64,000 nucleotides of DNA from Pocillopora damicornis. Taxonomy: Eukaryota. A program made the translations under genes and the position numbers. The stretch spans positions 124,001 to 188,000 of the forward strand of contig NW_020843987.1 of the NCBI RefSeq assembly GCF_003704095.1, written 5' to 3'. Shown piece by piece: positions 10,765-24,201 of the stretch (within the stretch, counting starts at the first letter, position 1; each line of letters starts with the position of its first letter). Under the pieces are notes generated by a model. It worked only from the letters and a program-made list of their open reading frames with translations, was not told the DNA's origin and did no database searches.

Positions 10765-13700
10765 ATGGCTGCCCTGTTCTTTGTTCTCGCCGTTTTAGCT
10801 GTTTCTGTGCCTCTAAAGTCATCTGGTAAGCTGAAAATAACTTTAATTGAACGTTAAATCTAAAATGTAGGGTAATTATAAAGTTAAAAGTCTCCATCGG
10901 GAAGTTAATGTGAGAAATTTTCAGCACTTTTTTTCGCCACACGAGGCAGGACTCTATTGGATAATCTACTTTGACCTTTTCTAGAGTGTTTTTTGCTTTT
11001 CAAACTTCCTAATTTTTATCAGACGCTGTACAATTATTGATTGACACATTTTGCCGTCTACATCGTTTTGTAACATTCAGCGACGTGTTACTGTATTTGA
11101 TGAAGGCGAGCACAACCTCCAGAATAAAATTGAAGTAACAGTATGGATGAAATGCCTTGAGTGTGTCACGAAATATCTTCTTAACGTTGATTTCACTTCG
11201 TGGTTTTGAATTAGGTGATGCTTGCGTAGGAGCTAGGCCAACCACAGACATTTATACCACAAGGAATATTTTGCTGTCATCAGAGAGTGTGTTCATTGTT
11301 GAATTTTCCCTCAAATGTGACAATGGTGCAAAGGTATGGTATATTTGCGGATGGGTGAAGTAGTCCTAGTTTGATGGTCTTATTCTTATGCTGTCTGAAA
11401 AATTTCCATTTCCATGATATGAGTACCAGAGAGAAAAATACAATTCAAGAAACTACTGGATAGTTCTGCTCAGATACAACTGTAGCTGAGAGAGAGTTAA
11501 CTTTAAATATAGAACGATATTTTGTAGAATTTAAGAAGTTGCCCAAGACTCCTTTGTTTTTGTTAAACCATTTTCTTTGATTAGTGAAGAAGGGAAAGGC
11601 CCTTGCACAACCCCATGCTAAATTTGTATACACTTAGAATTACAAGGAAAAAGGAATGATCACTGACTAATGAAGCTCTTGACTGTTAAACAAATTCTCC
11701 TTGTCAGCACTTCACATGTTCCTCAAATGTATGAAGAACAGAATATGTTTACTGATGTAAGGGTGTAGAGGGTTTATTTGCATAACTGGAACCAATTGCT
11801 CATTTGTGCACCATGAAGAACAGTAAATTATGATTGGTTATTGTGATTGCCATAGATGCATGCTAACTTTTTCAACATGGAACATAAAAGCATACCAATA
11901 AAAAATGGTGCAATGCTTACAAGATAAGGAAACTCCTAATATATTTCTTAAGACATTTATGATATATGTAAATCAACCACTTTATTGTTCATTGTTAAAC
12001 TTTTCAAATTGCTGAAAAGTCTTGGGAATCATTGCATGACTTCAGTGGCTCACTTGAGATTTTTTGGTAAGCAAACTGAACAGTTCTGCTCTTTAAATGC
12101 AGGTAAAGGAATTTATTCTTTCATATGTTTTATTATGTAAACAGAATGTGAATCTGTATGCTGAAGTTAATGGAAAAGTTATGCCAGTTACAAGATCGAC
12201 TGATGATGCAAAATACCAGGTTTGTAATTATTTGTAGCTGATTTTAGAAAGATCAATGTGAACTTGGCAGGGAATAATTCCTATGTACCTCACACAGGCT
12301 GATTGGCTAGGTCTAAGTAAACAGCAAATGCATTTACTTTTCAACTCAGAACTGTGCTTCAAGAGTTTAATTTCTCATAATTTTCAATTTACTGGCATTG
12401 AAAGGAATAAACTACCATGTAGTTTTTCAGTTGTGGTATATTCTAAAATGATAATGAACCCCAGTGTCAGTGAAAGTGATACATATTGTATCTACCTTGC
12501 TGCCTTGTGGCTTAGTAAAAATCAACTACTTTTCACCTCCACATCAGTAAATAATTGTAAAATGTTCTTCCCCATGGATGGAAAACTAGTCCATCACAAG
12601 TTACCCTGGGCATTATCAGGCTTCTCTAAAAGTTACAGAGTTAGCTGCCCCCATTCAAACTCCTGGGTGAAGGGAGGGATCATCAGAGTGAAGTGTCTTA
12701 TCCAAGAACGCAGGACAAGATTTAGCCAGGTTGCAAAGCCAGATCTCTTGACATTAAGTCCAGAGTGCTAGCCTTTTGACCAGTGGGTCTTCCTAATTGT
12801 TGGCTCAGTGGCATTTTTGACCCTTAATACACTAACATTGGTATGCATATTCTCCTTACTGTTCTCTATACATTTCCCTGGGTGCTGACAAGGAGAATTA
12901 GTTAAACAATGAACAGCTTCTATAGTCAGTGATCATGTCTTTTATCCTCAACCTTAATATTTGATTCAGGGGAGATATTGTAAGGAGAAATTATATGTTA
13001 GTCACTCTTAGGTATTATAGGGTTAAATGAAATCCAAGGAGCTAACATGGAGTTCTTCCATCTCATGACACCCTGTTTCAATTCCCAGCTGTTAAAACCT
13101 TGAGGATTGAATCTTCTCCTGGTTCTCATCTTTTCTTTCTTTATAGCAACTAATATGCCAAATTCCATGGTAACCGAGAATCAGTGAAGCTAGAAACCAT
13201 GCCTTGAGAATTTCTTTGTTCGATAATTGTCCCAAAGACATGAATGATGAATGTGAATCAGCTACCCTGAGTGTACAAAGTACATATGATTACACTATTA
13301 CATGTTCTGATATGTCTTTGGATAACTCAATGTTGAACTTTTTTTTTAGTACCTGAATAACGCACCAACTTGCTTTTTGTTATTTTTATTATTAGGTCAG
13401 CTGGGCAGAGGAGCACAAGGAGGCTAAAGCTGGTGTCTACAAATTGAGTTTCTATGATGATGAGGGATATGCAGCCTATAGAAAGGTACACTGGTCAAAT
13501 TAAGGATGGTTTAATATTGGGAAACAATTTGGTCATTTTAATACATCTTTTTGGTCCCCACCTCCCTCCCCCCCATACTGCACCCAACTAGTTTGTTATA
13601 AACCTTTTTATTTATTGCTGTTAGTATGGATGATTTTGAACCAGTTTGAGTCATTTCAAGTAATTTTGGATAACAATGTCTAAAACCCACTGTTCTGATT

Positions 13701-15192
13701 GTCAGCTATCCCCTCTAGCTGCTACACATCCTTGTAAATTAGTTATAAGAAATTGTCCTAATATCAAGGTAACAACTTCTCCATGATAAGTTGAGTATTC
13801 TCACTACATGTTTTCTGGATACTGTTTGGATATTCTAAGGAGAAGTTATGTGTTAATCACTCCTAGTGTGGCAAAGAACTCTTGATCATATCACAGAAAA
13901 AAAAATTGTCTCTGCAACCTGTTTGCTGTTAAAATATCTGCTAAGAAAATTTTATTCCTTTCAAGTCTTGTCCTTGGTGGAGACGAGGGAGGGAGTGTAT
14001 CAAAACTCCTTTGTTCTACCTCTGTGTTTTTTCTTGTCCTTCCTGTTAACTATGTTAAATTTATAAGGAGAAGGATTCACACTCAACTTGCAGATGTTGA
14101 GCATTTCAAAGGGCTGTCCAGTAAATGATGACTTGTATAATTATCTGTCAATCCAATGAGAAAGATGATTACAAAATATACCGGAAGTCTGATATATGTG
14201 ACTTGCTCTTTGATAATCAGAATAATCAGAAACAAATGATAGGATTTTAATATATTTAGGATGGTACAAACATGTTCTCATCTACCCTAATTTGCTTTTA
14301 GGCACAGAGAAGTGGTACACCAAGTGAGGCCAAGGCCTTGTTCTCCATTGATGTCAATCATCGGGTGAGGAATGCTTTCACATCCATTGTTTTTATTCCA
14401 TTTTATGACATTTCTCTCTTTTAGTTACTCCTAAGAAACAATAGATTTTCTAGATGAGTGTCTAACTTCCCAAAGACCTTTGTGATGAACACAATCGCTA
14501 CCATGATGCAAAATCATGATTAGACTCTTTATCCTCTAAGAAGTTCTGAGATGTCTTTGGGAAGGTGTACACTGGGTTTTTTGGGCTTTTGTATCATGAA
14601 AATTTTGCCAAACTTTCCAGTTGAATACCTACAATCTTCTTCATCCATTTTTACCTCATGGTATGATGGTGGTCATTCCATGAGGATTAAGTAGCAACCT
14701 AAAATTCACTTACTCACTTGCACTATTCTGATCTGTTAGACCATAAATTTATGATTTGAACATGGATGAAATTCATTATGGCCTGCCTCCCTAACTAGGT
14801 TTGGTTCTCTCCCCAAAGTCATGCCATTGTCTTCTGTATATCTATCTGATGGGGAGGGACAGGTTCAGAAATGTTATTTGATCTACATACTTGTCATATT
14901 TACTTGTTTTCCCAACCCATCCAACCAATGGTTTTTGATGACCCTCATGTAGAGTGTAACCTTACTTTTGGCAGAAAGTAACTCAAGTTATGGAGGCCTG
15001 GCACCCCAGCAGGTTGATTCTAACTTTCTCTTACTGATATGTTTCCTAAAGGTTAATTCAAAGTTGATTTGTTGTTTTTAGGGAGCTGGCCGTGAAGGAC
15101 TCTATGTACAAACAGAGTTTATTGCCGTTGTAGCAGCTTTGTTGATTTGGTGGAGTGCCAACAATGTTAAAAGTAAACTGCAGGAATCCTAG
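10765..15192 (+). CDS. SSR4: Translocon-associated protein subunit delta (TRAP-delta), 6 exons, 172 aa
   Basis: Exons 10765-10825, 11215-11333, 12145-12219, 13396-13485, 14302-14364 and 15082-15192 are GT-AG and total 519 nt. Signal peptide, then GDAC...YTT...ESVFIVEFSLKC...NLYAEVNGKVMPVTR...YQVSW...FYDDEGY...RKAQR...LFSIDVNHRG...VQTEFIAVV and a C-terminal TM, matching TRAP-delta. AATAAA at 15259-15264. Confidence 0.95.
12565..12793 (-). mobile_element. Degenerate tRNA-derived SINE
   Basis: CTCCTGGGTG..GG..GG...AGAGTGAAGTGTCTT..CCAAGAAC followed by a decayed antisense tRNA-like head; resembles a common anthozoan SINE as remembered. Confidence 0.5.
12817..13026 (+). mobile_element. TTAA-flanked MITE, family A
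   Basis: TTGACCCTT...AGGGTTAA with the family A body. Confidence 0.75.
13232..13321 (+). ncRNA. Box C/D snoRNA candidate A (SSR4 intron 3)
   Basis: Perfect 10-bp terminal stem CCAAAGACAT/ATGTCTTTGG. Box C ATGATGA 13244-13250, D' CTGA 13267-13270, internal hairpin GTGTAC-AAA-GTACAT, C' ATGATTA 13286-13292, D CTGA 13307-13310. Sense to the host; box D is 85 nt upstream of the 3' splice site. Confidence 0.8.
14120..14197 (+). ncRNA. Box C/D snoRNA, SNORD110-like (SSR4 intron 4)
   Basis: Box C ATGATGA 14125-14131. The guide ATCTGTCAATCC (14143-14154) is the exact complement of the conserved 18S segment GGAUUGACAGAU. D' ATGA 14156-14159, C' ATGATTA 14165-14171, D CTGA 14189-14192. TGATGACTTG...ATCTGTCAATCC resembles vertebrate SNORD110 as remembered. 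Confidence 0.8.
14466..14564 (+). ncRNA. Box C/D snoRNA candidate B (SSR4 intron 5), paralog of candidate A
   Basis: Perfect 12-bp terminal stem CTTCCCAAAGAC/GTCTTTGGGAAG. Box C GTGATGA 14482-14488, guide AATCGCTAC 14493-14501, D' ATGA 14503-14506, C' ATGATTA 14516-14522, D CTGA 14546-14549. Confidence 0.8.
14930..15042 (+). ncRNA. Weak box C/D snoRNA candidate (SSR4 intron 5) with SNORD26-like guide
   Basis: TGATGA at 14936-14941 and CTGA at 15034-15037, preceded by TAACTTTCTCTT-A, which resembles the remembered SNORD26 guide. The terminal stem is poor and the CTGAT could be the branch point. Confidence 0.3.
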
Positions 15193-16233
15193 GCTGGCTC
15201 AATTGGTTTAAAATTTTTAACTTTATCCACAACTGTAAAACACTTTTTCTTTGTATTTAATAAAATTGGATACAAAAACAAGAACTTTGAGTAATGATGC
15301 TGAATTTTAAATAAATTGCGGTTAAGCAAGTCTTGATTGTGAATTTCAAGGCAACCACTTACTGATTTACAGAGTTTGCAGATACTGTGCAGTCATAAAT
15401 ATAATTACAAATAGAAAGCGTAATAATAAGTGATCTGATTCTTCACAAAATATATTAAGAATAAAAATCCATTTTACTGTTATAGGGTTAAATAACTGTT
15501 TCTCTTACATACTGAAATGTTATTAGCATTATTATCATTATTATTATTATTTCTACTATTGTTATTATAATAATTTAATAATAAACAATTATTGGCCTTA
15601 GTAGAGGTGAATATTTACACAGCCGTGTAGCAGCAAGGTAAATATCCACTACTTTTGCCAACACTGAGGTGAATAATTGTTTTAGTATATACCAAACAAA
15701 TTTAAAAATAATAAGGTGCAATCAACTGAGTTGAAAATGTAAATTAGCCACGCAAATCATTTCTGAACCAGCCAGCCAATGAGCACGCACAAAAAGGACA
15801 CCTGAGTGGTATATGCTTATTAAAAATATCTACAATCATTAAAGTAGGGGCTCATTACCTGTGTCTTGGCTTTGATTGGTGCCGTCAGACGCTAAAACAG
15901 GAGCCAAGAGAAACAGCTATGGCAGTTGCCTCTCCCTGATCTACTGAGATGAGAGTTTCATCCCATAGCTACATGAACACTAGTCCAATAGATGTTCCTG
16001 AAACCACCTTACAAAAAATACTTTATGGGTGGTACTCAACATAATTAATTATGGTAAGAAAACTTGTAGGACGTTGTACCTGCAGATAAAATATTTTCGC
16101 GATAAATATCAAAACATTCTTTAAAAATTTGAATTTTTTTTTCGGTTAACAAAGTCAGATTTAGCATCGGCATGGATTCGCTTCGTGTTCCAGAAGCTTC
16201 CTGAAGTCTTCGGAAGTCATCTTTCCTCGCTTG

Positions 16234-19200
16234 TTATAGTTCGGTGTGTTCAGTATCTGTGTCTAAACTTGCTGCATCTGCATTAATCATCACGTGATAG
16301 AAGTAATTTATTGTCTTTTCATAATTCTTGACTCCAATTCTTTCATTAAACCCATGGATTCTTTTGGCGTCCTCGGGTGTCAAAACTGATGGCATAAATC
16401 TGTAGACGGCATCTGTGAGCTCTAGATAATACTTGGTATCTGTGTTTGCTATCATAAGTCCTGAAAAGAAATACAACGGGGAAAAGAGTTCTTAATACCT
16501 TGAACTAAAAAGCTTAGGGTTGTTAACAACACCTATAGGGGAGGAGGGGGTCGTTTGTCCCTCCCCACCCTGGACGAATAACTATTCATCTATATTCATC
16601 TTTTTCTCAAATTTCTCCATCAGTTTGTTTACTTTTTTTCCAAAACAATAAATAAATTGCCAACTACTAGGATACCCTGTGTAAGATTTGTATTTCAGGC
16701 GCTTACCTGGCGATACGCCAACTTCTGGGAAAACTTGCCGCACGCTTTGAGAAATAACCTGTGAGGAACACAAATTAAAAAATAAATAAATAAAAGAAAA
16801 CAATTTTACATGAATGAATGTATGCATCTCTGACAAAAAATTAATTTGTTGAATTAGCTTTAAAGATCAAAGTAGATCTTTACATCGTTAGCCAAGGCAA
16901 GGAATCAATGTCTCTATCGGAACAACTGCACACCTACCCTTCCCTCAACCCGACAACAGTCGAGGGTTAGGGGAGGGTTATTGCTGGATTTGGGAGAGGG
17001 GTAGGTGCACAACAGTTAAGATACTGACTTTGATCCAATAGTCAAAGTACAACAAACTACTTACAGGTCACATTTCGACAGGGTCTACAAACAGCCAAAT
17101 AAAACGTAACCAACATCAAATAGACACCCTCCCCTCCCCGAACTTGTTTCCTTAAAGCGCCCCTCCTCCCCCCGCCCCACCATGAACTCTATTTCCGAGA
17201 GTTTCTTGTAATAATCCTGTTTTGTTCATTGTTTTGTTTTTTATACCTGGAATCCAAATGAATGTATATCCCAGCTAGAGACGGGTGAGGGCTTTGCTGA
17301 CTGCATTACACGAATGCTAACACGATCATCGTCAATACAGCGACGGTCATGCTCCAGAACCTACACAAGAGAACAAAAATTTATTTATTTTTTCCCTGTT
17401 ATGTTTTGAATTTTTTTCTTTAAGTTAATCCGTGTTTTACTTTAAGCGTACTTCCCCTTGTCTGATTGGTTGAGAAAGTAGCACGAGTTTTCTACACCAA
17501 TCACAGAGCGAAGCAAGAAAAACAAAACAATCCCGGAATACTTGCCACACTCAACTTAAGGTTGCTGTAAATAAGCAGAGCGATGTGTCCTCACCTCTTC
17601 AATCGTGTTACTCGGATGAACCCGATGGTTTACAGTGACTCTTGCAGAGGAGGGTATCACGTTAGCCTATTTGGTGGTGAAAAAAGAAAGAATGAAAGAT
17701 AAAAGATATGATATCATATTTTTCTTGGTTGCACGCCTATATTGATTATTTTATTCGCCGACCTATCTCAATATCTACCACAAATGATGCTTTGATATTT
17801 GATCCCGGTATGATGCACATGAAAGCTTTGTGCAGGGCCAAGCAACCTCGTTCCCAAGGTCCTCTCTCTTCCTCCTTCGTAAAAGGACCTTGGTTGTAGC
17901 TGGTCACGTAACTATGCAAAGAACGCCGCAGGGATGGTGGGTGCTCGACTTAATTTAGTCACTAGTGCAATTAAATTCTATCGTTTGGAGGGACAAATCG
18001 CGAGTGCTTTATGCAGCTAGTACTGACAAAAATTTTACACATGAGCCTCTCCCTCCATTTCAAAACATCAAAACGTTGACATTATTCAAAATAATTTTAA
18101 CACAAACCTTGACCCCGGCGTTAAACTGAGTTACAGCAGTTGTTGTCCGAAGGAAAGCATTTGTTGTAGGTTTCTTCTCAAGGATTCTATATGGAAAGAA
18201 CAACTTTTACATCAGGTGAGAAGACGTTCCTTGGAGTCTTCCCAAATTCGAACTACCCTCAGCTTTTCTCACTGAAACGGTTGGCATGTTGAAAAATCAC
18301 AAGTCTCACAAAATTATCATCCAATCTAAAAATCTCGTCAGCTTTTGCAATAAGTACTTAAGTATCGTATTTCTTTGAAATTTCCCGAGTGCAGCATTTC
18401 TGCGTACATCTAGTGTACCTTGGTAGGGAGTTCTCGTTGTTAGTGGCGAAATTCTGTATGAGCACATTGTGGTTTGAAAAACCGATAAAAATTGTAATCT
18501 AGTGCTTTTATAATTGTTTTACTGGTACAATTCAACCAATCAGGGCACTCGTAGTATCTCACTTATTATATAATAATTTGTCCCACGTTCGTGGCAGATC
18601 GATTGGCATGGGTAGCTATTTTTGATATGTAACAAACCTGACAACAATTGGGCTGAAAAGCCACAGGTTTGCCAAGATAGCCCTCAGATAGACTGGAACC
18701 TGGGAAATAAAGATACCTTATTAGCAACTTGCTTGTTAGAACTTTTCGGTGTAACACTCAAAGTTTATGAAAATATAACATACGCGGACAAATATCCAAA
18801 TTTGGTATAACTACTCAGGTGATTATAGAGATGTGCGCATTCTGATTGGTCGAGGATTGCGTCATAGCTTGCTATAACCACCTTGCGTGATGTGATTATA
18901 GCAGGTGCGCTTAATTTCAAAATGACTGCCTCGCGTCATGCCAATCAAATAAACCCGTAAAATTGCATGTTCATCTTGACTATAAATATTGCCTATTTAT
19001 AGTCAAAGGTAGCCCCGTGTACCTCTTTGTACCACTGTAATGTTAGTTGGTATGCGACATCGGGAAATACAAGGATTTGTGTAGGAAAACAGCTCCATTT
19101 AAACAGCTCCATTTATGAACAAAAGAACGTCCTGGTCTCAATAAACCCAAAACCCCTTCAATCAGTGTTTTTTTGGTCGCCAGTGTGGTTATCAAGTCAA

Positions 19201-22200: not shown

Positions 22201-24201
22201 AAAAACCAGTAATGATAATGATAACCATAACCATAACGAAAGAAAGCGGGTCAAAAATAATTAGTTTCACACAGTTACTGTGCAAACAACTAAAATGTGA
22301 CCTCTTCACTGACCCTCACAAGAAGGATAACTAACATTTCAAAATTATCCCCTTGCTGACAATGATAATGATGACATTTGTCTTTCTCTGAAAAAAGATG
22401 CCAATGACTTCCTGTACAACTGGGAGTTATGAGTGTGAAGATGGCTGAAAGTCAAATCCTTGCTCAAAACAGTTGCAATGCAGACACAGGATTGCTCAAA
22501 GTGGGCAATTCTGTGTCTGCATTGAACAATAAAAATGAAGCCAACTGCTGGAAATCAATGTAGATATCATTGATTGCATTTCCTGTTTTTTATGAGATTT
22601 TATAAGATATTTTTGATAACCCTTAAACAAAGAACTCCTTTATAAAACGAAAGCACTTCCAAAGTACCATGACTCCATTTTTGTGATCCAAAGTTCCTCT
22701 TCCCCAGAAGTACCCATCTTGAACACGCCCTTCAAAGGGGGGTACTTCCCATGATTCATTGGTGGCAGGTACTACATCAAAGTGACCAGCAATCAGATAG
22801 GGCTTTAGCAATGTGTTACTTCCTTTTACGGAAACAAGCAAACTGTAATTTCCAATAATTTTGTGTTCAACAAGGGAATGGCTAAACACATCTGAAAACT
22901 CTGCAAGAAATAGATAAGTCAAATAATTCCTTGCCATCCAATTTGTGTTGTACTTATCTTCTCATAAATTTTCTGAGCTACCATAGGTCAGCATAGTATC
23001 CACTAAATTCAAGTATCAAACTAATACATCTATTTTTTTTTTTTCACTCTAGAAAAGTTGGGCCATTTGAATTTGACCATTGCTAAAACATTTCTATTTT
23101 GGAAAGCTTTTAGTTTGTTTCAATAGTTCTAATGTGTATTGCCTTTGAATACTTTAATTTTAATTAGTATAGAACTTGAACGCTTCTGATTATTGTTTAC
23201 AGTTTTAGCACTATATAAATTCCTTATCATTATCATTATCATTATCCTTATTAAGGATGACATTAATTGTAAATTAAATAGTTTTCACATACACACTTAT
23301 TAATTTCAAGTATTGTTCTATTTTGCATACCTTCCTAAATAATAGGTATGTTCTAATTCTGTATCTAAGAGGAAAACCTCCCAGCCTTTCTTTGACAAAC
23401 TTGCTGAACAATACCACACACTAACTACAAATGTCAGATCATTACCCGTCTTCATTATGCACGACAGTTCTGGATTAAATTTGGAAGGTATTAGGCAGTC
23501 AGAGCAAACTTGCAGGCTGTCAGATCATTTTGCACCCCAGCTACTTTACGAAATGTGATCAAAGACAGTAAAAAAGAACTTTTTAACTGATTCTAATATA
23601 AACGTGTTGCTAAGCATAATTCTCTCAGTTCAGATCATACCCCTATTACGATTTCTATGACATCCCTGCATAATAGCTGAGGATTATAAAAACATCTTTT
23701 TGCACCATGAAATGGGACAGGAGAGAATCACTTCTGAATAACACTTAAATTCAATTCCGCTGTTACGTACCAGCTGTTTTCGAATTTACAGTTCAAAACT
23801 AATGAAAACTAAGACCAATTAATACGCTGCAGTATATATGACTGTATCCTTGAAATCAGCTAAAATTTGAAAGGTCTGCCTTAATAGAGTAAGAAAAAAA
23901 GCAGGAAATCATCATAAATCTTGCCTTTGCAATCCTCACCTTTCAGAATAAACTGAAGGAAATTGTGTAACTCTTCTCGATTGTAATTTCCAACATTCCA
24001 GGAAACCGTTTGGAAAGAAAGCGCAGTTTGAAACCTTCTCTTCACGTCCTCGTCTACATTGATATAATCTAGATCACTTGGTTTGCATGGGTAGGCAGCT
24101 GTTGGCTGATGAGAATACATCACAGTTCTTGCGATAATTATTAAAACGACTGTGAAAAAGGCTGTCAGAGAAAGGTATGAAAGTTCGCGAACACCCGCCA
24201 T
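16234..24201 (-). CDS. PM20D1: N-fatty-acyl-amino acid synthase/hydrolase PM20D1-like (peptidase M20 family), 12 exons, 506 aa
   Basis: Exons 24201-23940, 22900-22668, 22027-21941, 21023-20890, 20152-20033, 19538-19460, 18699-18638, 18186-18108, 17666-17595, 17360-17247, 16758-16707 and 16460-16234 are GT-AG and total 1521 nt. Motifs: [63 protein letters not shown]; N-terminal hydrophobic anchor. Confidence 0.93.
16901..17036. mobile_element. Palindromic MITE; half copy at 45831-45893
   Basis: CACCTACCCTTCCC...GGGAGAGGGGTAGGTG inverted arms; the 45831 copy shares CACCTACCC and ACAACAGTC. Confidence 0.65.
19680..19912. repeat. Degenerate (AACG)n/(GCAC)n simple repeat in PM20D1 intron 5
   Basis: Read directly; it explains the overlapping spurious ORFs at 19590-19995. 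Confidence 0.9.
20231..20441 (+). mobile_element. TTAA-type MITE, related family
   Basis: TCAACCCTTTCACTCCCAAGATCT...GGGATTTGAGGAGGTTA; about 210 bp with the same layout as families A and B. Confidence 0.65.
21157..21192. other. Assembly gap within a poly-G tract
   Basis: 36 N flanked by G runs. Confidence 0.99.

What the first reader, a model, noticed from the sequence alone, without database searches (positions are those of the whole stretch)
13232..15042. SSR4 (TRAP-delta) acts as a multi-snoRNA host gene
Seen: introns 3, 4 and 5 each hold a sense-strand C-D'-C'-D cassette of 67-68 nt from box C to box D. All three share the C' box ATGATTA, and two are closed by perfect 10-12 bp stems. 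A weaker fourth candidate lies at 14930-15042. None is visible in the ORF track. I do not know SSR4 as a snoRNA host in vertebrates, so this may be an undescribed cnidarian host arrangement next to an SSU-processome gene.
Basis: partly seen in the sequence, partly recalled or inferred. Interest (0 to 1): 0.75.

Follow-up and report, generated by a model that had tools for sequence, protein, structure and literature searches.

The report
Three coral snoRNAs inside SSR4 introns
Three introns of a stony coral's SSR4 (TRAP-delta) gene each carry a genuine, conserved small nucleolar RNA that guides ribosomal RNA methylation, which is a new example of a well-known arrangement and not a new kind of thing.

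Summary
Introns 3, 4 and 5 of a spliced TRAP-delta/SSR4 gene each contain a sense-strand box C/D snoRNA.

- Candidate 3 (14466-14564) scores above Rfam's SNORD61 cut-off.
- Candidate 2 (14108-14211) carries the SNORD110 18S guide in the same register, but stays below that family's cut-off.
- Candidate 1 (13232-13321) is a paralogue of candidate 3. Its conserved D' guide fits a universally conserved 28S helix.
- The fourth candidate (14930-15042) is chance: no stem, no fold signal, no conservation.

A metagenome scan found 31 SNORD61-like loci. In 13 of them (other stony corals) the snoRNA sits in the same SSR4 intron, and one more distant relative also has it in SSR4. Between these corals, only the exons, the three snoRNAs and one repeat still align. 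Boxes and working guides are 92-100% conserved, and linkers are not. Copies also appear, decay or persist in introns 2 and 3 in different lineages.

The human hosts are RBMX (SNORD61) and NOP56 (SNORD110), and host turnover is already well described.

Not shown: the mature small RNAs, the methylations, and targets on the coral's own rDNA, which is missing from the assembly.

The scan noted this same stretch before (s1-766454, s1-766499). Verdict: real, a new member of a known kind, modest interest.

The parts
10765..10825 (+). SSR4 exon 1 (start codon and signal peptide)
   Evidence: Reading frame. Splice joint 10824>11214 (cut +1), GT..AG, seen in RNA runs X1 and X11.
11215..11333 (+). SSR4 exon 2
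   Evidence: Pfam PF05404 positions 15-52, E 3e-07. Splice joints.
12145..12219 (+). SSR4 exon 3
   Evidence: PF05404 positions 53-77, E 1.9e-07. Joints 11331>12143 and 12217>13394.
13232..13321 (+). Candidate 1: box C/D snoRNA in intron 3, a paralogue of candidate 3. The conserved D' guide (13253-13266) fits 28S AGUAGCUGGUUC. The D guide is not conserved.
   Evidence: Boxes and 11-bp stem. Fold z -3.06. Family copies in 5 other coral loci. Guide-target scan. The element ends 74 nt before exon 4.
13396..13485 (+). SSR4 exon 4
   Evidence: PF05404 positions 78-107, E 1.3e-09. Joints 12217>13394 and 13483>14300 in X1, X5 and X11.
14108..14211 (+). Candidate 2: SNORD110-like box C/D snoRNA in intron 4 (core 14125-14192). 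Its D' guide is complementary to 18S AGGAUUGACAGAU.
   Evidence: Rfam SNORD110 25.8 bits, E 0.054, below the gathering score of 64. Present in 9 of 9 coral loci that span intron 4, and in L199. Only copy in this genome. Target scan: 2 of 500 shuffles do as well.
14302..14364 (+). SSR4 exon 5
   Evidence: Joints 13483>14300 and 14363>15081. tblastn matches of 81-95% in 9 coral loci. No Pfam hit on its own at 21 aa.
14466..14564 (+). Candidate 3: SNORD61 orthologue in intron 5. The D guide targets 18S at the SNORD61 site. The D' guide AAUCGCUACC is conserved but has no target found.
   Evidence: Rfam RF00270 46.4 bits against a gathering score of 43. 12-bp stem. Fold z -5.34. Found at the intron-5 position in 13 coral loci.
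14930..15042 (+). Fourth candidate: rejected, chance motifs.
   Evidence: Terminal stem of 4 bp. Fold z +1.09. No Rfam match. 0 of 12 coral loci align here. 5 listed variants among 4 runs.
15082..15192 (+). SSR4 exon 6 with stop codon
   Evidence: PF05404 positions 133-162, E 3.8e-06. Joint 14363>15081. 100% peptide identity in 11 coral loci.

Best explanation
The SSR4 (TRAP-delta) gene of this stony coral is a protein-coding host for three intron-encoded box C/D snoRNAs.

How they are probably made (inferred from general knowledge of the class): each snoRNA is transcribed as part of the SSR4 pre-mRNA. After splicing, it is released by debranching and exonucleolytic trimming up to the snoRNP that assembles on the C/D kink-turn, which is closed by the terminal stem. 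It then guides fibrillarin to 2'-O-methylate the rRNA nucleotide paired to the fifth guide position upstream of box D or D'.

The three snoRNAs:
- Candidate 3 is the SNORD61 orthologue. Its D guide targets the 18S U that is Um1442 in human.
- Candidate 2 is the functional equivalent, and probably the orthologue, of SNORD110. Its D' guide targets the 18S U that is Um1288 in human.
- Candidate 1 arose by duplication of the candidate 3 unit within the same gene. It uses its D' guide on the 28S helix ...CUAGUAGCUGGUUCC..., and the fifth-position rule falls on the G just 3' of the A that is methylated in human (Am1534, SNORD77/80).

The arrangement is shared by stony corals. Copies are gained, kept or lost among introns 2-5 in different lineages.

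Shown here: sequence anatomy, family match, host splicing, conservation, and complementarity to a surrogate rRNA.
Inferred: processing, snoRNP assembly and methylation.
For: - Host gene: five GT..AG joints in RNA runs X1, X5 and X11 and none in the probable DNA run X16. Four of five exon peptides hit PF05404 in colinear order.
- Family match: SNORD61 scores 46.4 bits against a gathering score of 43 in the window, and 43.7-48.4 bits in 5 of 6 coral loci tested; the sixth, L199, hits snoU61 of the same clan at 39.1 bits, below its score of 55. SNORD110 scores 25.8 bits here and 28.8-33.3 bits in 5 of 6 loci, with the guide AUCUGUCAAUCC aligned in the same register as the family consensus.
- Conservation of position: of 31 metagenome loci matching a SNORD61 pattern, 13 have the snoRNA at the SSR4 intron-5 position. 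Seven of these have exons 5 and 6 on both sides, 4 have exon 6 only and 2 have exon 5 only. L199 has it upstream of exon 4.
- Candidate 2 was not part of the search pattern. It is present in 9 of 9 coral loci that span intron 4, and in L199.
- Candidate 1 family copies are intact in intron 3 of L181, L189 and L193, and in intron 2 of L184, L187, L189 and L193.
- Footprint: blastn of window 10600-15500 against 12 coral loci aligned only the exons, the three snoRNAs (74-89% identity) and one repeat (2 alignments).
- Pattern of constraint: boxes and working guides have 0.92-1.00 mean pairwise identity, linkers 0.43-0.79, and the unused D guides of candidates 1 and 2 have 0.58-0.64.
- Stems: the terminal stems hold up in the alignment folds, with 2 pairs (candidate 1 family) and 4 pairs (candidate 2) changed on both sides.
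- Targets on a complete surrogate eukaryotic rDNA unit: candidate 2 D' pairs over 12 bp (2 of 500 shuffled guides do as well), candidate 3 D over 13 bp including 2 G.U (7 of 500), and candidate 1 D' over 11 bp including 1 G.U (36 of 500).
- Wobble-consistent change: the L193 copies read AACCAGCUAC where the window has AAUCAGCUAC, which turns the G.U pair into G-C.
- Loss together: the decayed copies in L187 and L184 have lost box D, and in L187 guide complementarity as well.
- Copy number: in this genome the SNORD61 guide, the SNORD110-like pattern and the shared 3' motif give snoRNA-like hits only in this gene.
- Human sites and hosts from papers: Um1288/SNORD110 and Um1442/SNORD61 (PMC11550049, table passage); RBMX (PMC3511933, table passage); NOP56 (PMC9454646, passage).
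Against: - No mature 70-100 nt RNA was seen. The runs laid were poly(A)/oligo-dT contigs, which cannot show small RNAs. They cover the introns only at low depth (about 4-35, against thousands on exons).
- The coral's own rDNA is absent from the assembly apart from decayed fragments. Targets were therefore mapped on rDNA of unidentified eukaryotes that contaminate prokaryote assemblies.
- Candidate 2 falls far below the SNORD110 gathering score. In the window it also has a poor inner terminal stem; other corals have CCAGTA/TACTGG.
- The 28S match of candidate 1 is only marginal by shuffling (36 of 500). Its fifth-position nucleotide is a G that is not in the human methylation table I read. The known site is the neighbouring A.
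- The D guide and D box of candidate 3 orthologues were required by the search pattern, so their invariance across loci is by construction.
- Population data are weak. One listed variant falls in 292 nt of snoRNA, against 38 in about 2417 nt of other intron sequence. The tool withheld 100 further variants.
Confidence: 0.88

Rival explanations
1. Candidate 1 is a non-functional or decaying duplicate of the SNORD61 unit. It keeps its boxes and stem for now but guides no modification.
For: Its D guide differs in 6 of 7 family copies. Its 28S match is marginal (36 of 500 shuffles) and points to a G that is not in the human site table. Copies of this family have demonstrably decayed in intron 3 of L187 and L184. 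No Rfam family matches it at E of 0.1 or better.
Against: The D' guide core CAGCUAC and all the boxes are kept in 7 of 7 intact copies, in introns 2 and 3 of at least four coral lineages. The one guide change in L193 keeps pairing with the 28S site (G.U to G-C). Where a copy decays, it loses box D and guide complementarity together. This is what is expected if the intact copies are under selection.
Confidence: 0.12
2. The conserved intronic blocks are not snoRNAs. They are cis-regulatory RNA elements of SSR4 itself, such as splicing control hairpins.
For: The conservation is confined to short hairpin-closed blocks in introns. One paper reports intronic snoRNAs pairing with nearby intron sequence to affect host splicing (PMC10324135, abstract in the listing only).
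Against: All the blocks carry C, D', C' and D boxes at canonical spacing. One passes a curated snoRNA model. Two carry 12-13 bp guides to the rRNA sites of known snoRNA families, in the correct register. No complement of the orphan D' guide of candidate 3 lies in the window.
Confidence: 0.03
3. The cassettes are chance combinations of short motifs.
For: Loose TGATGA...CTGA pairs are common: 13 of 70 TGATGA sites in the window have one. The fourth candidate is one of these.
Against: See the strict-scan control, the fold z-scores, the Rfam score and the cross-species conservation.
Confidence: 0.01

Closest known systems
Human SNORD61 (U61), Rfam RF00270, clan CL00067
   Same: Box C/D architecture. 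The 14-nt D guide UCCUCUAAGAAGUU followed by CUGA is the same, so the 18S uridine targeted is the same (Um1442 in human; PMC11550049 and PMC3511933 passages). The score is above the family's gathering score.
   Different: The host is SSR4 intron 5, not RBMX. The coral version has a long 12-bp terminal stem and a conserved second (D') guide with no target found.
Human SNORD110, Rfam RF00610
   Same: The D' guide AUCUGUCAAUCC is in the same register as the family consensus. It is complementary to 18S GGAUUGACAGAU, the site given as Um1288.
   Different: It scores 25.8 bits against a gathering score of 64. The D' box is AUGA rather than CUGA. The host is SSR4 intron 4, not NOP56. The rest of the sequence is unrelated.
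Human SNORD77 / SNORD80 (28S Am1534 in the numbering of PMC11550049)
   Same: The D' guide of candidate 1 pairs with the same 28S helix (AGUAGCUGGUUC).
   Different: The register is shifted by one, so the fifth-position nucleotide is the G after that A. There is no Rfam similarity. The placement of the A rests on the site spacing 1522/1524/1534, laid by me on the Rfam consensus.
Multi-snoRNA protein-coding hosts with paralogous intronic copies, for example NOP56 (SNORD56/57/86/110) and RPL7A (SNORD24/36B/36C)
   Same: Several introns of one highly expressed housekeeping gene each carry one snoRNA, some of them paralogues (passages).
   Different: The host encodes an ER translocon-associated subunit, not a ribosome-biogenesis or ribosomal protein.

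Membership tests
Box C/D snoRNA (class) | C box RUGAUGA near the 5' end and D box CUGA near the 3' end | tested here: met
   All three candidates. Invariant or nearly so in the orthologues.
Box C/D snoRNA (class) | Terminal stem that brings boxes C and D together | tested here: met
   11 bp in candidate 1 and 12 bp in candidate 3. Candidate 2 has only an outer 7-bp stem in the window, but CCAGTA/TACTGG in other corals.
Box C/D snoRNA (class) | Internal D' and C' boxes | tested here: met
   D' is CUGA or AUGA, and C' is AUGAUUA in all three. Conserved across species.
Box C/D snoRNA (class) | A guide of at least 10 nt complementary to rRNA or snRNA, directly upstream of D or D' | tested here: met
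   Candidate 2 D' 12 bp, candidate 3 D 13 bp, candidate 1 D' 11 bp, on surrogate rDNA. The coral's own rDNA is not available.
Box C/D snoRNA (class) | Sense-strand position in an intron of an expressed, spliced host gene | tested here: met
   Splice joints and high exon depth in 3 RNA runs.
Box C/D snoRNA (class) | Accumulates as a stable RNA of about 70-100 nt bound by fibrillarin, NOP56, NOP58 and SNU13, and directs 2'-O-methylation | not testable with these tools
Only poly(A)-type contigs could be laid.
SNORD61 (RF00270) | Score at or above the curated gathering score | tested here: met
   46.4 bits against 43. Five of 6 coral orthologues also pass.
SNORD61 (RF00270) | D guide to the 18S site of Um1442 | tested here: met
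   The guide is identical to the family consensus and pairs with ...CUUCUUAGAGGG in 18S. The human numbering comes from papers.
SNORD110 (RF00610) | Score at or above the curated gathering score | tested here: not met
   25.8 bits against 64. Orthologues score 28.8-33.3 bits. I therefore file it as SNORD110-like by function, not as a family member.
SNORD110 (RF00610) | D' guide to the 18S site of Um1288, in the same register | tested here: met
   Alignment to the consensus. The 12-bp duplex puts the first U of GGAUUGACAG at guide position 5.
SNORD77/SNORD80 | A guide that places the conserved 28S A (Am1534) at position 5 | tested here: not met
   In candidate 1 that A pairs with position 4 and the following G with position 5. 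No Rfam hit.

The most novel reading that the evidence does not exclude
The SSR4 introns of stony corals act as a small nursery for snoRNAs. A SNORD61-derived unit was copied from intron to intron and re-armed with a new D' guide. That guide would place a coral- or cnidarian-specific Gm next to the universally conserved 28S Am site. Meanwhile the SNORD61 orthologue itself keeps a second, strongly conserved guide (AAUCGCUACC) whose target is not in the rRNA core. That target could be another RNA, such as an snRNA, a tRNA, an mRNA or a lineage-specific rRNA segment.
Probability: 0.2. Interest if true: 0.45.

Novelty: new member of a known kind. Interest (0 to 1): 0.3.

Why it matters
- It adds three well-supported snoRNA genes to a coral genome where they are invisible to ORF-based annotation. 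Two have clear human counterparts.
- It documents SSR4 as a conserved snoRNA host across stony corals.
- It gives a compact natural example of snoRNA birth, guide replacement and decay within one host gene.
- It makes three testable predictions of rRNA methylation sites in a cnidarian.
- It does not change how snoRNAs are understood. Movement of old snoRNA families between host introns is already established (PMC3511168, passages read).

Tried and rejected
Dead ends and rejected ideas:

- rRNA of this genome. Rfam SSU and LSU searches found only fragments: C1013 covers SSU positions 4-605 and 1502-1604, C3123 holds a 962-nt remnant of LSU 1889-3399, and C2498 covers LSU 675-954. These fragments are mutated. 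The SNORD61 guide has 8 places in the genome. Seven are outside the window, and none of those is rRNA or any Rfam family.
- Viral-contig scans for rDNA. A 14-mer gave at least 119 loci, none with 18S or 28S similarity. Two longer 28S motifs each gave one chimeric contig of no use.
The exon-2 ORFs of other species found (P0001-P0012) could therefore not be traced to their contigs, and anemone or hydrozoan SSR4 introns could not be examined.
- D guides of candidates 1 and 2, and the D' guide of candidate 3. No rRNA target beyond chance was found: 466, 274 and 400 of 500 shuffles did as well. The candidate 3 D' guide has no complement in the window.
- A separate guide for the neighbouring 28S A. 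Of 8 pattern hits in the genome, none is clearly a snoRNA. One (C738) has a C-box-like motif at a suitable distance but abuts a run of N, and I left it there.
- Weak H/ACA and miRNA Rfam hits in the region, with E of 4 to 9, I took as chance.
- The MAFFT alignment of the three window snoRNAs together (A1) was poor. I compared candidates 1 and 3 by eye instead.
- Spliced model. I searched the exons one by one and never joined them. The full-length protein used in local tblastn was P0007, a natural protein returned.
- Supplementary files of papers were not asked for. Table S2 of PMC3511168 and snoRNA atlases may list hosts that I could not see.
- I took no contig for human. The metagenome pattern used H at one position so that the form shown in the Rfam SNORD61 consensus would not be collected.

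Full report
**What is there.** I read window 12000-16500 and located the boxes by script. This confirms three sense-strand C-D'-C'-D cassettes of 67, 68 and 68 nt from box C to box D. They start at 13244, 14125 and 14482. All three have the C' box ATGATTA. Candidates 1 and 3 are closed by stems of 11 bp (10 Watson-Crick pairs plus one G.U) and 12 bp. As single RNAs they fold better than shuffles, with z-scores of -3.06, -2.08 and -5.34; 0, 6 and 0 of 200 shuffles fold as well. A strict motif-plus-stem scan finds 1 such element in the 64-kb window, against a mean of 0.15 in 200 shuffles.

**The fourth candidate.** It has a TGATGA at 14936 and a CTGA at 15034, but a terminal stem of at most 4 bp. 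Its fold is no better than shuffles (z +1.09; 173 of 200 shuffles fold as well). In the window, 13 of 70 TGATGA sites have a CTGA at a suitable distance. I reject it.

**The host gene.** Contigs of three RNA runs from three studies (X1, X5, X11) join 10824>11214, 11331>12143, 12217>13394, 13483>14300 and 14363>15081, all at GT..AG. X16, probably a DNA run, shows none of these joints. Exon contigs have depths in the thousands, and intron contigs about 4-35.

I translated the exons one at a time. Four of five exon peptides hit Pfam PF05404 (TRAP-delta) at profile positions 15-52, 53-77, 78-107 and 133-162. The 21-aa exon 5 has no hit on its own.

**Family assignment.**
- Against Rfam 15, candidate 3 scores 46.4 bits for SNORD61 (gathering score 43). 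Its D guide and D box are identical to the family consensus.
- Candidate 2 scores 25.8 bits for SNORD110 (gathering score 64, E 0.054). The alignment places its AUCUGUCAAUCC on the family's D' guide in the same register.
- Candidate 1 has no meaningful Rfam hit.
- By eye, candidates 1 and 3 share the stem arms CCCAAAGAC and ATGTCTTTGG, the start of the guide region, AATC(A)GCTACC, the C' box and GTTCTGA. They are paralogues that differ in the D guide and by one base in the D' guide. An earlier first-stage note made the same point (s1-766454).

**Conservation.** It returned 31 loci. Local tblastn with the separate exon peptides, and with P0007 (a natural 171-aa TRAP-delta homologue), gave these results:
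- 13 loci have the snoRNA at the SSR4 intron-5 position. Seven are flanked by exons 5 and 6, four have exon 6 only on the contig, and two have exon 5 only.
- One more divergent locus (L199, exon 4 at 77% peptide identity) has it about 1 kb upstream of exon 4.
- The other 17 loci show no TRAP-delta exon. They are other eukaryotes with other contexts.

These 13 loci carry the same stem and the same D' guide AATCGCTACC, with one C-to-T variant in L188. Rfam calls SNORD61 above its gathering score in 5 of 6 loci tested. L199 hits snoU61 of the same clan at 39.1 bits, below that family's score of 55.

Candidate 2 was not in the search pattern. It is present in intron 4 in 9 of the 9 coral loci that span that intron, and in L199 downstream of exon 4.

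Candidate 1 relatives are intact in intron 3 of L181, L189 and L193, and in intron 2 of L184, L187, L189 and L193. In L184 and L187 the intron-3 copy has lost box D and the 3' stem arm, and in L187 part of the guide as well. The window has no intron-2 copy.

**Footprint and pattern of constraint.** blastn of the whole window gene against 12 of these loci aligns only the exons, the three snoRNAs (74-89% identity, similar to the exons at 74-91%) and one repeat (2 alignments). Nothing aligns to the fourth candidate. In several corals, only about 100 nt separate the SNORD61 orthologue from exon 6.

Within the snoRNAs, boxes and working guides have 0.92-1.00 mean pairwise identity. Linkers have 0.43-0.79. 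The D guides of candidates 1 and 2 have 0.58-0.64. The D guide and D box of candidate 3 orthologues are invariant by construction of the search. The terminal stems are kept in the alignment folds, with 2 and 4 pairs changed on both sides.

Among the four laid runs, one listed variant (13277, in a linker) falls in 292 nt of snoRNA, against 38 in about 2417 nt of other intron sequence. The tool withheld 100 further variants, so this is weak support only.

**Targets.** The assembly lacks intact rDNA. As a surrogate I used eukaryotic rDNA that contaminates prokaryote assemblies. A 51-nt stretch of the coral's own 18S fragment recovered 45 such contigs. One of them led to a complete unit with the 18S 3' part, 5.8S and a full LSU (L223).

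- The candidate 2 D' guide pairs over 12 bp with AGGAUUGACAGAU of 18S. Two of 500 shuffled guides do as well.
- The candidate 3 D guide pairs over 13 bp, including 2 G.U, with UGCUUCUUAGAGGG. Seven of 500 shuffles do as well.
- The candidate 1 D' guide pairs over 11 bp, including 1 G.U, with AGUAGCUGGUUC of the LSU. This is the top hit in the unit, but 36 of 500 shuffles do as well.
- The L193 copies read C where the window has U opposite a target G. This keeps the pair.
- The candidate 1 D guide, the candidate 2 D guide and the candidate 3 D' guide find nothing beyond chance: 466, 274 and 400 of 500 shuffles do as well.

A review table lists human 18S Um1288 with SNORD110 and Um1442 with SNORD61. 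It also lists 28S Gm1522 (SNORD2), Am1524 (SNORD32A/51) and Am1534 (SNORD77/80) (PMC11550049, passages). I laid that 2-and-12 spacing on the Rfam LSU consensus AAUCGAACCaUCUAGUAGCUGG. This puts Am1534 at the A of GUAGC. The fifth guide position of candidate 1 then pairs with the next G, not with that A. This mapping is my inference.

**Copy number.** In this genome the SNORD61 guide has 8 places, and only the one in the window is a snoRNA. The shared 3' motif of candidates 1 and 3 has 11 exact places. I inspected 8 of the 9 that lie outside this gene, and none has both a C box and the 5' stem arm. The SNORD110-like pattern has 1 place, which is the window.

**How it most likely works.** The anatomy is that of intron-encoded box C/D snoRNAs. 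These are co-transcribed with a highly expressed housekeeping host, released from the spliced intron and trimmed to the snoRNP. The guide duplex then places fibrillarin on the nucleotide opposite position 5 upstream of D or D'. This mechanism is established knowledge of the class and was not shown here. Candidate 1 ends 74 nt before exon 4. From memory, this is close to the distance reported as optimal for intronic snoRNA processing.

**Comparison and novelty.** The human hosts are RBMX for SNORD61 (PMC3511933, table passage) and NOP56 for SNORD110 (PMC9454646, passage). Hoeppner and Poole trace the SNORD61 clan to the last eukaryotic common ancestor. They conclude that the intronic locations of snoRNAs are not stable over long timescales (PMC3511168, passages).

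Two full-text searches for SSR4 together with snoRNA terms gave 1 paper, irrelevant by its title, and 0 papers. SSR4 as a host therefore appears unreported in the library searched, and I did not see supplements or snoRNA databases. Other notes of this scan report snoRNAs in KARS and LARS1 introns of the same genome (untested by me).

The finding is real and tidy, but it is a new member of a known kind. The most novel reading left open is that the paralogue directs a lineage-specific Gm beside a universal Am, and that the SNORD61 orthologue's conserved second guide has a target outside the rRNA core.

**Limits.**
- No small-RNA evidence.
- No coral rDNA.
- The species behind the metagenome contigs are unnamed.
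- Cnidarians outside the stony corals could not be examined, apart from the single contig L199.
- The assembly's size and contig count (234,350,878 bases, 4,393 contigs) remind me of a published Pocillopora assembly. This is recall only.

Noticed in passing
window 10553-10663 (minus strand) and 8351-8488 (minus strand): The ORF that starts head-to-head about 100 nt upstream of SSR4 begins MKVKRVKHARRYLTLFKNSFGIFEPYQIL. I recall this as UTP23-like (an SSU processome protein). If so, the two genes probably share a bidirectional promoter. I ran no family search on it.
   Followed up: no
window 11584-11747 and 12732-13059: Two intronic repeat segments in introns 2 and 3 have very high summed contig depth (up to about 880,000 in the DNA-like run). 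Many 'opposite strands' joints link 11672-11714 to 12870-12951. This looks like a high-copy element present here as an inverted pair. Part of it also aligns to other coral loci.
   Followed up: partly
G000:C1013, C3123, C2498 (L001, L003-L006): The assembly holds only decayed fragments of 18S and 28S rRNA and no intact rDNA unit. The 18S fragment carries many transitions compared with the canonical sequence.
   Followed up: partly
L187 oriented 1612-1700 and L184 oriented 815-900: These are decayed copies of the candidate 1 snoRNA in intron 3 of another coral lineage. Box C, D' and C' are still readable, but box D and the 3' stem arm are gone, while an intact copy sits in intron 2.
   Followed up: yes
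G000:C738:335740-335833 (L226): A TATGATGT motif lies about 80 nt upstream of CCAGCTACTA+CTGA, which is the guide expected for the conserved 28S A next to the candidate 1 site. This may be the SNORD77/80-type snoRNA of this coral. Its 5' flank is a run of N, which I left alone.
   Followed up: partly
L182 and L206 (metagenome contigs of other eukaryotes): Each holds two tandem, nearly identical SNORD61-like genes, about 830 and 560 nt apart, outside any TRAP-delta context.
   Followed up: no
window 7176-7248 and 35604-35676: Two tRNA matches above the Rfam gathering score, 36.1 and 51.5 bits.
   Followed up: no
window 16234-16476 and 22623-22937 (minus strand): ORFs downstream of SSR4 on the other strand contain motifs that I recall from M20-family peptidases (for example HFDVVPA...[11 protein letters not shown]). 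Not tested.
   Followed up: no
L223 3621-4041 (minus strand): The surrogate eukaryotic LSU gene, found on a contig of a Nostoc assembly, carries a group I intron (Rfam 59.2 bits). The contig is eukaryotic contamination of that assembly.
   Followed up: no
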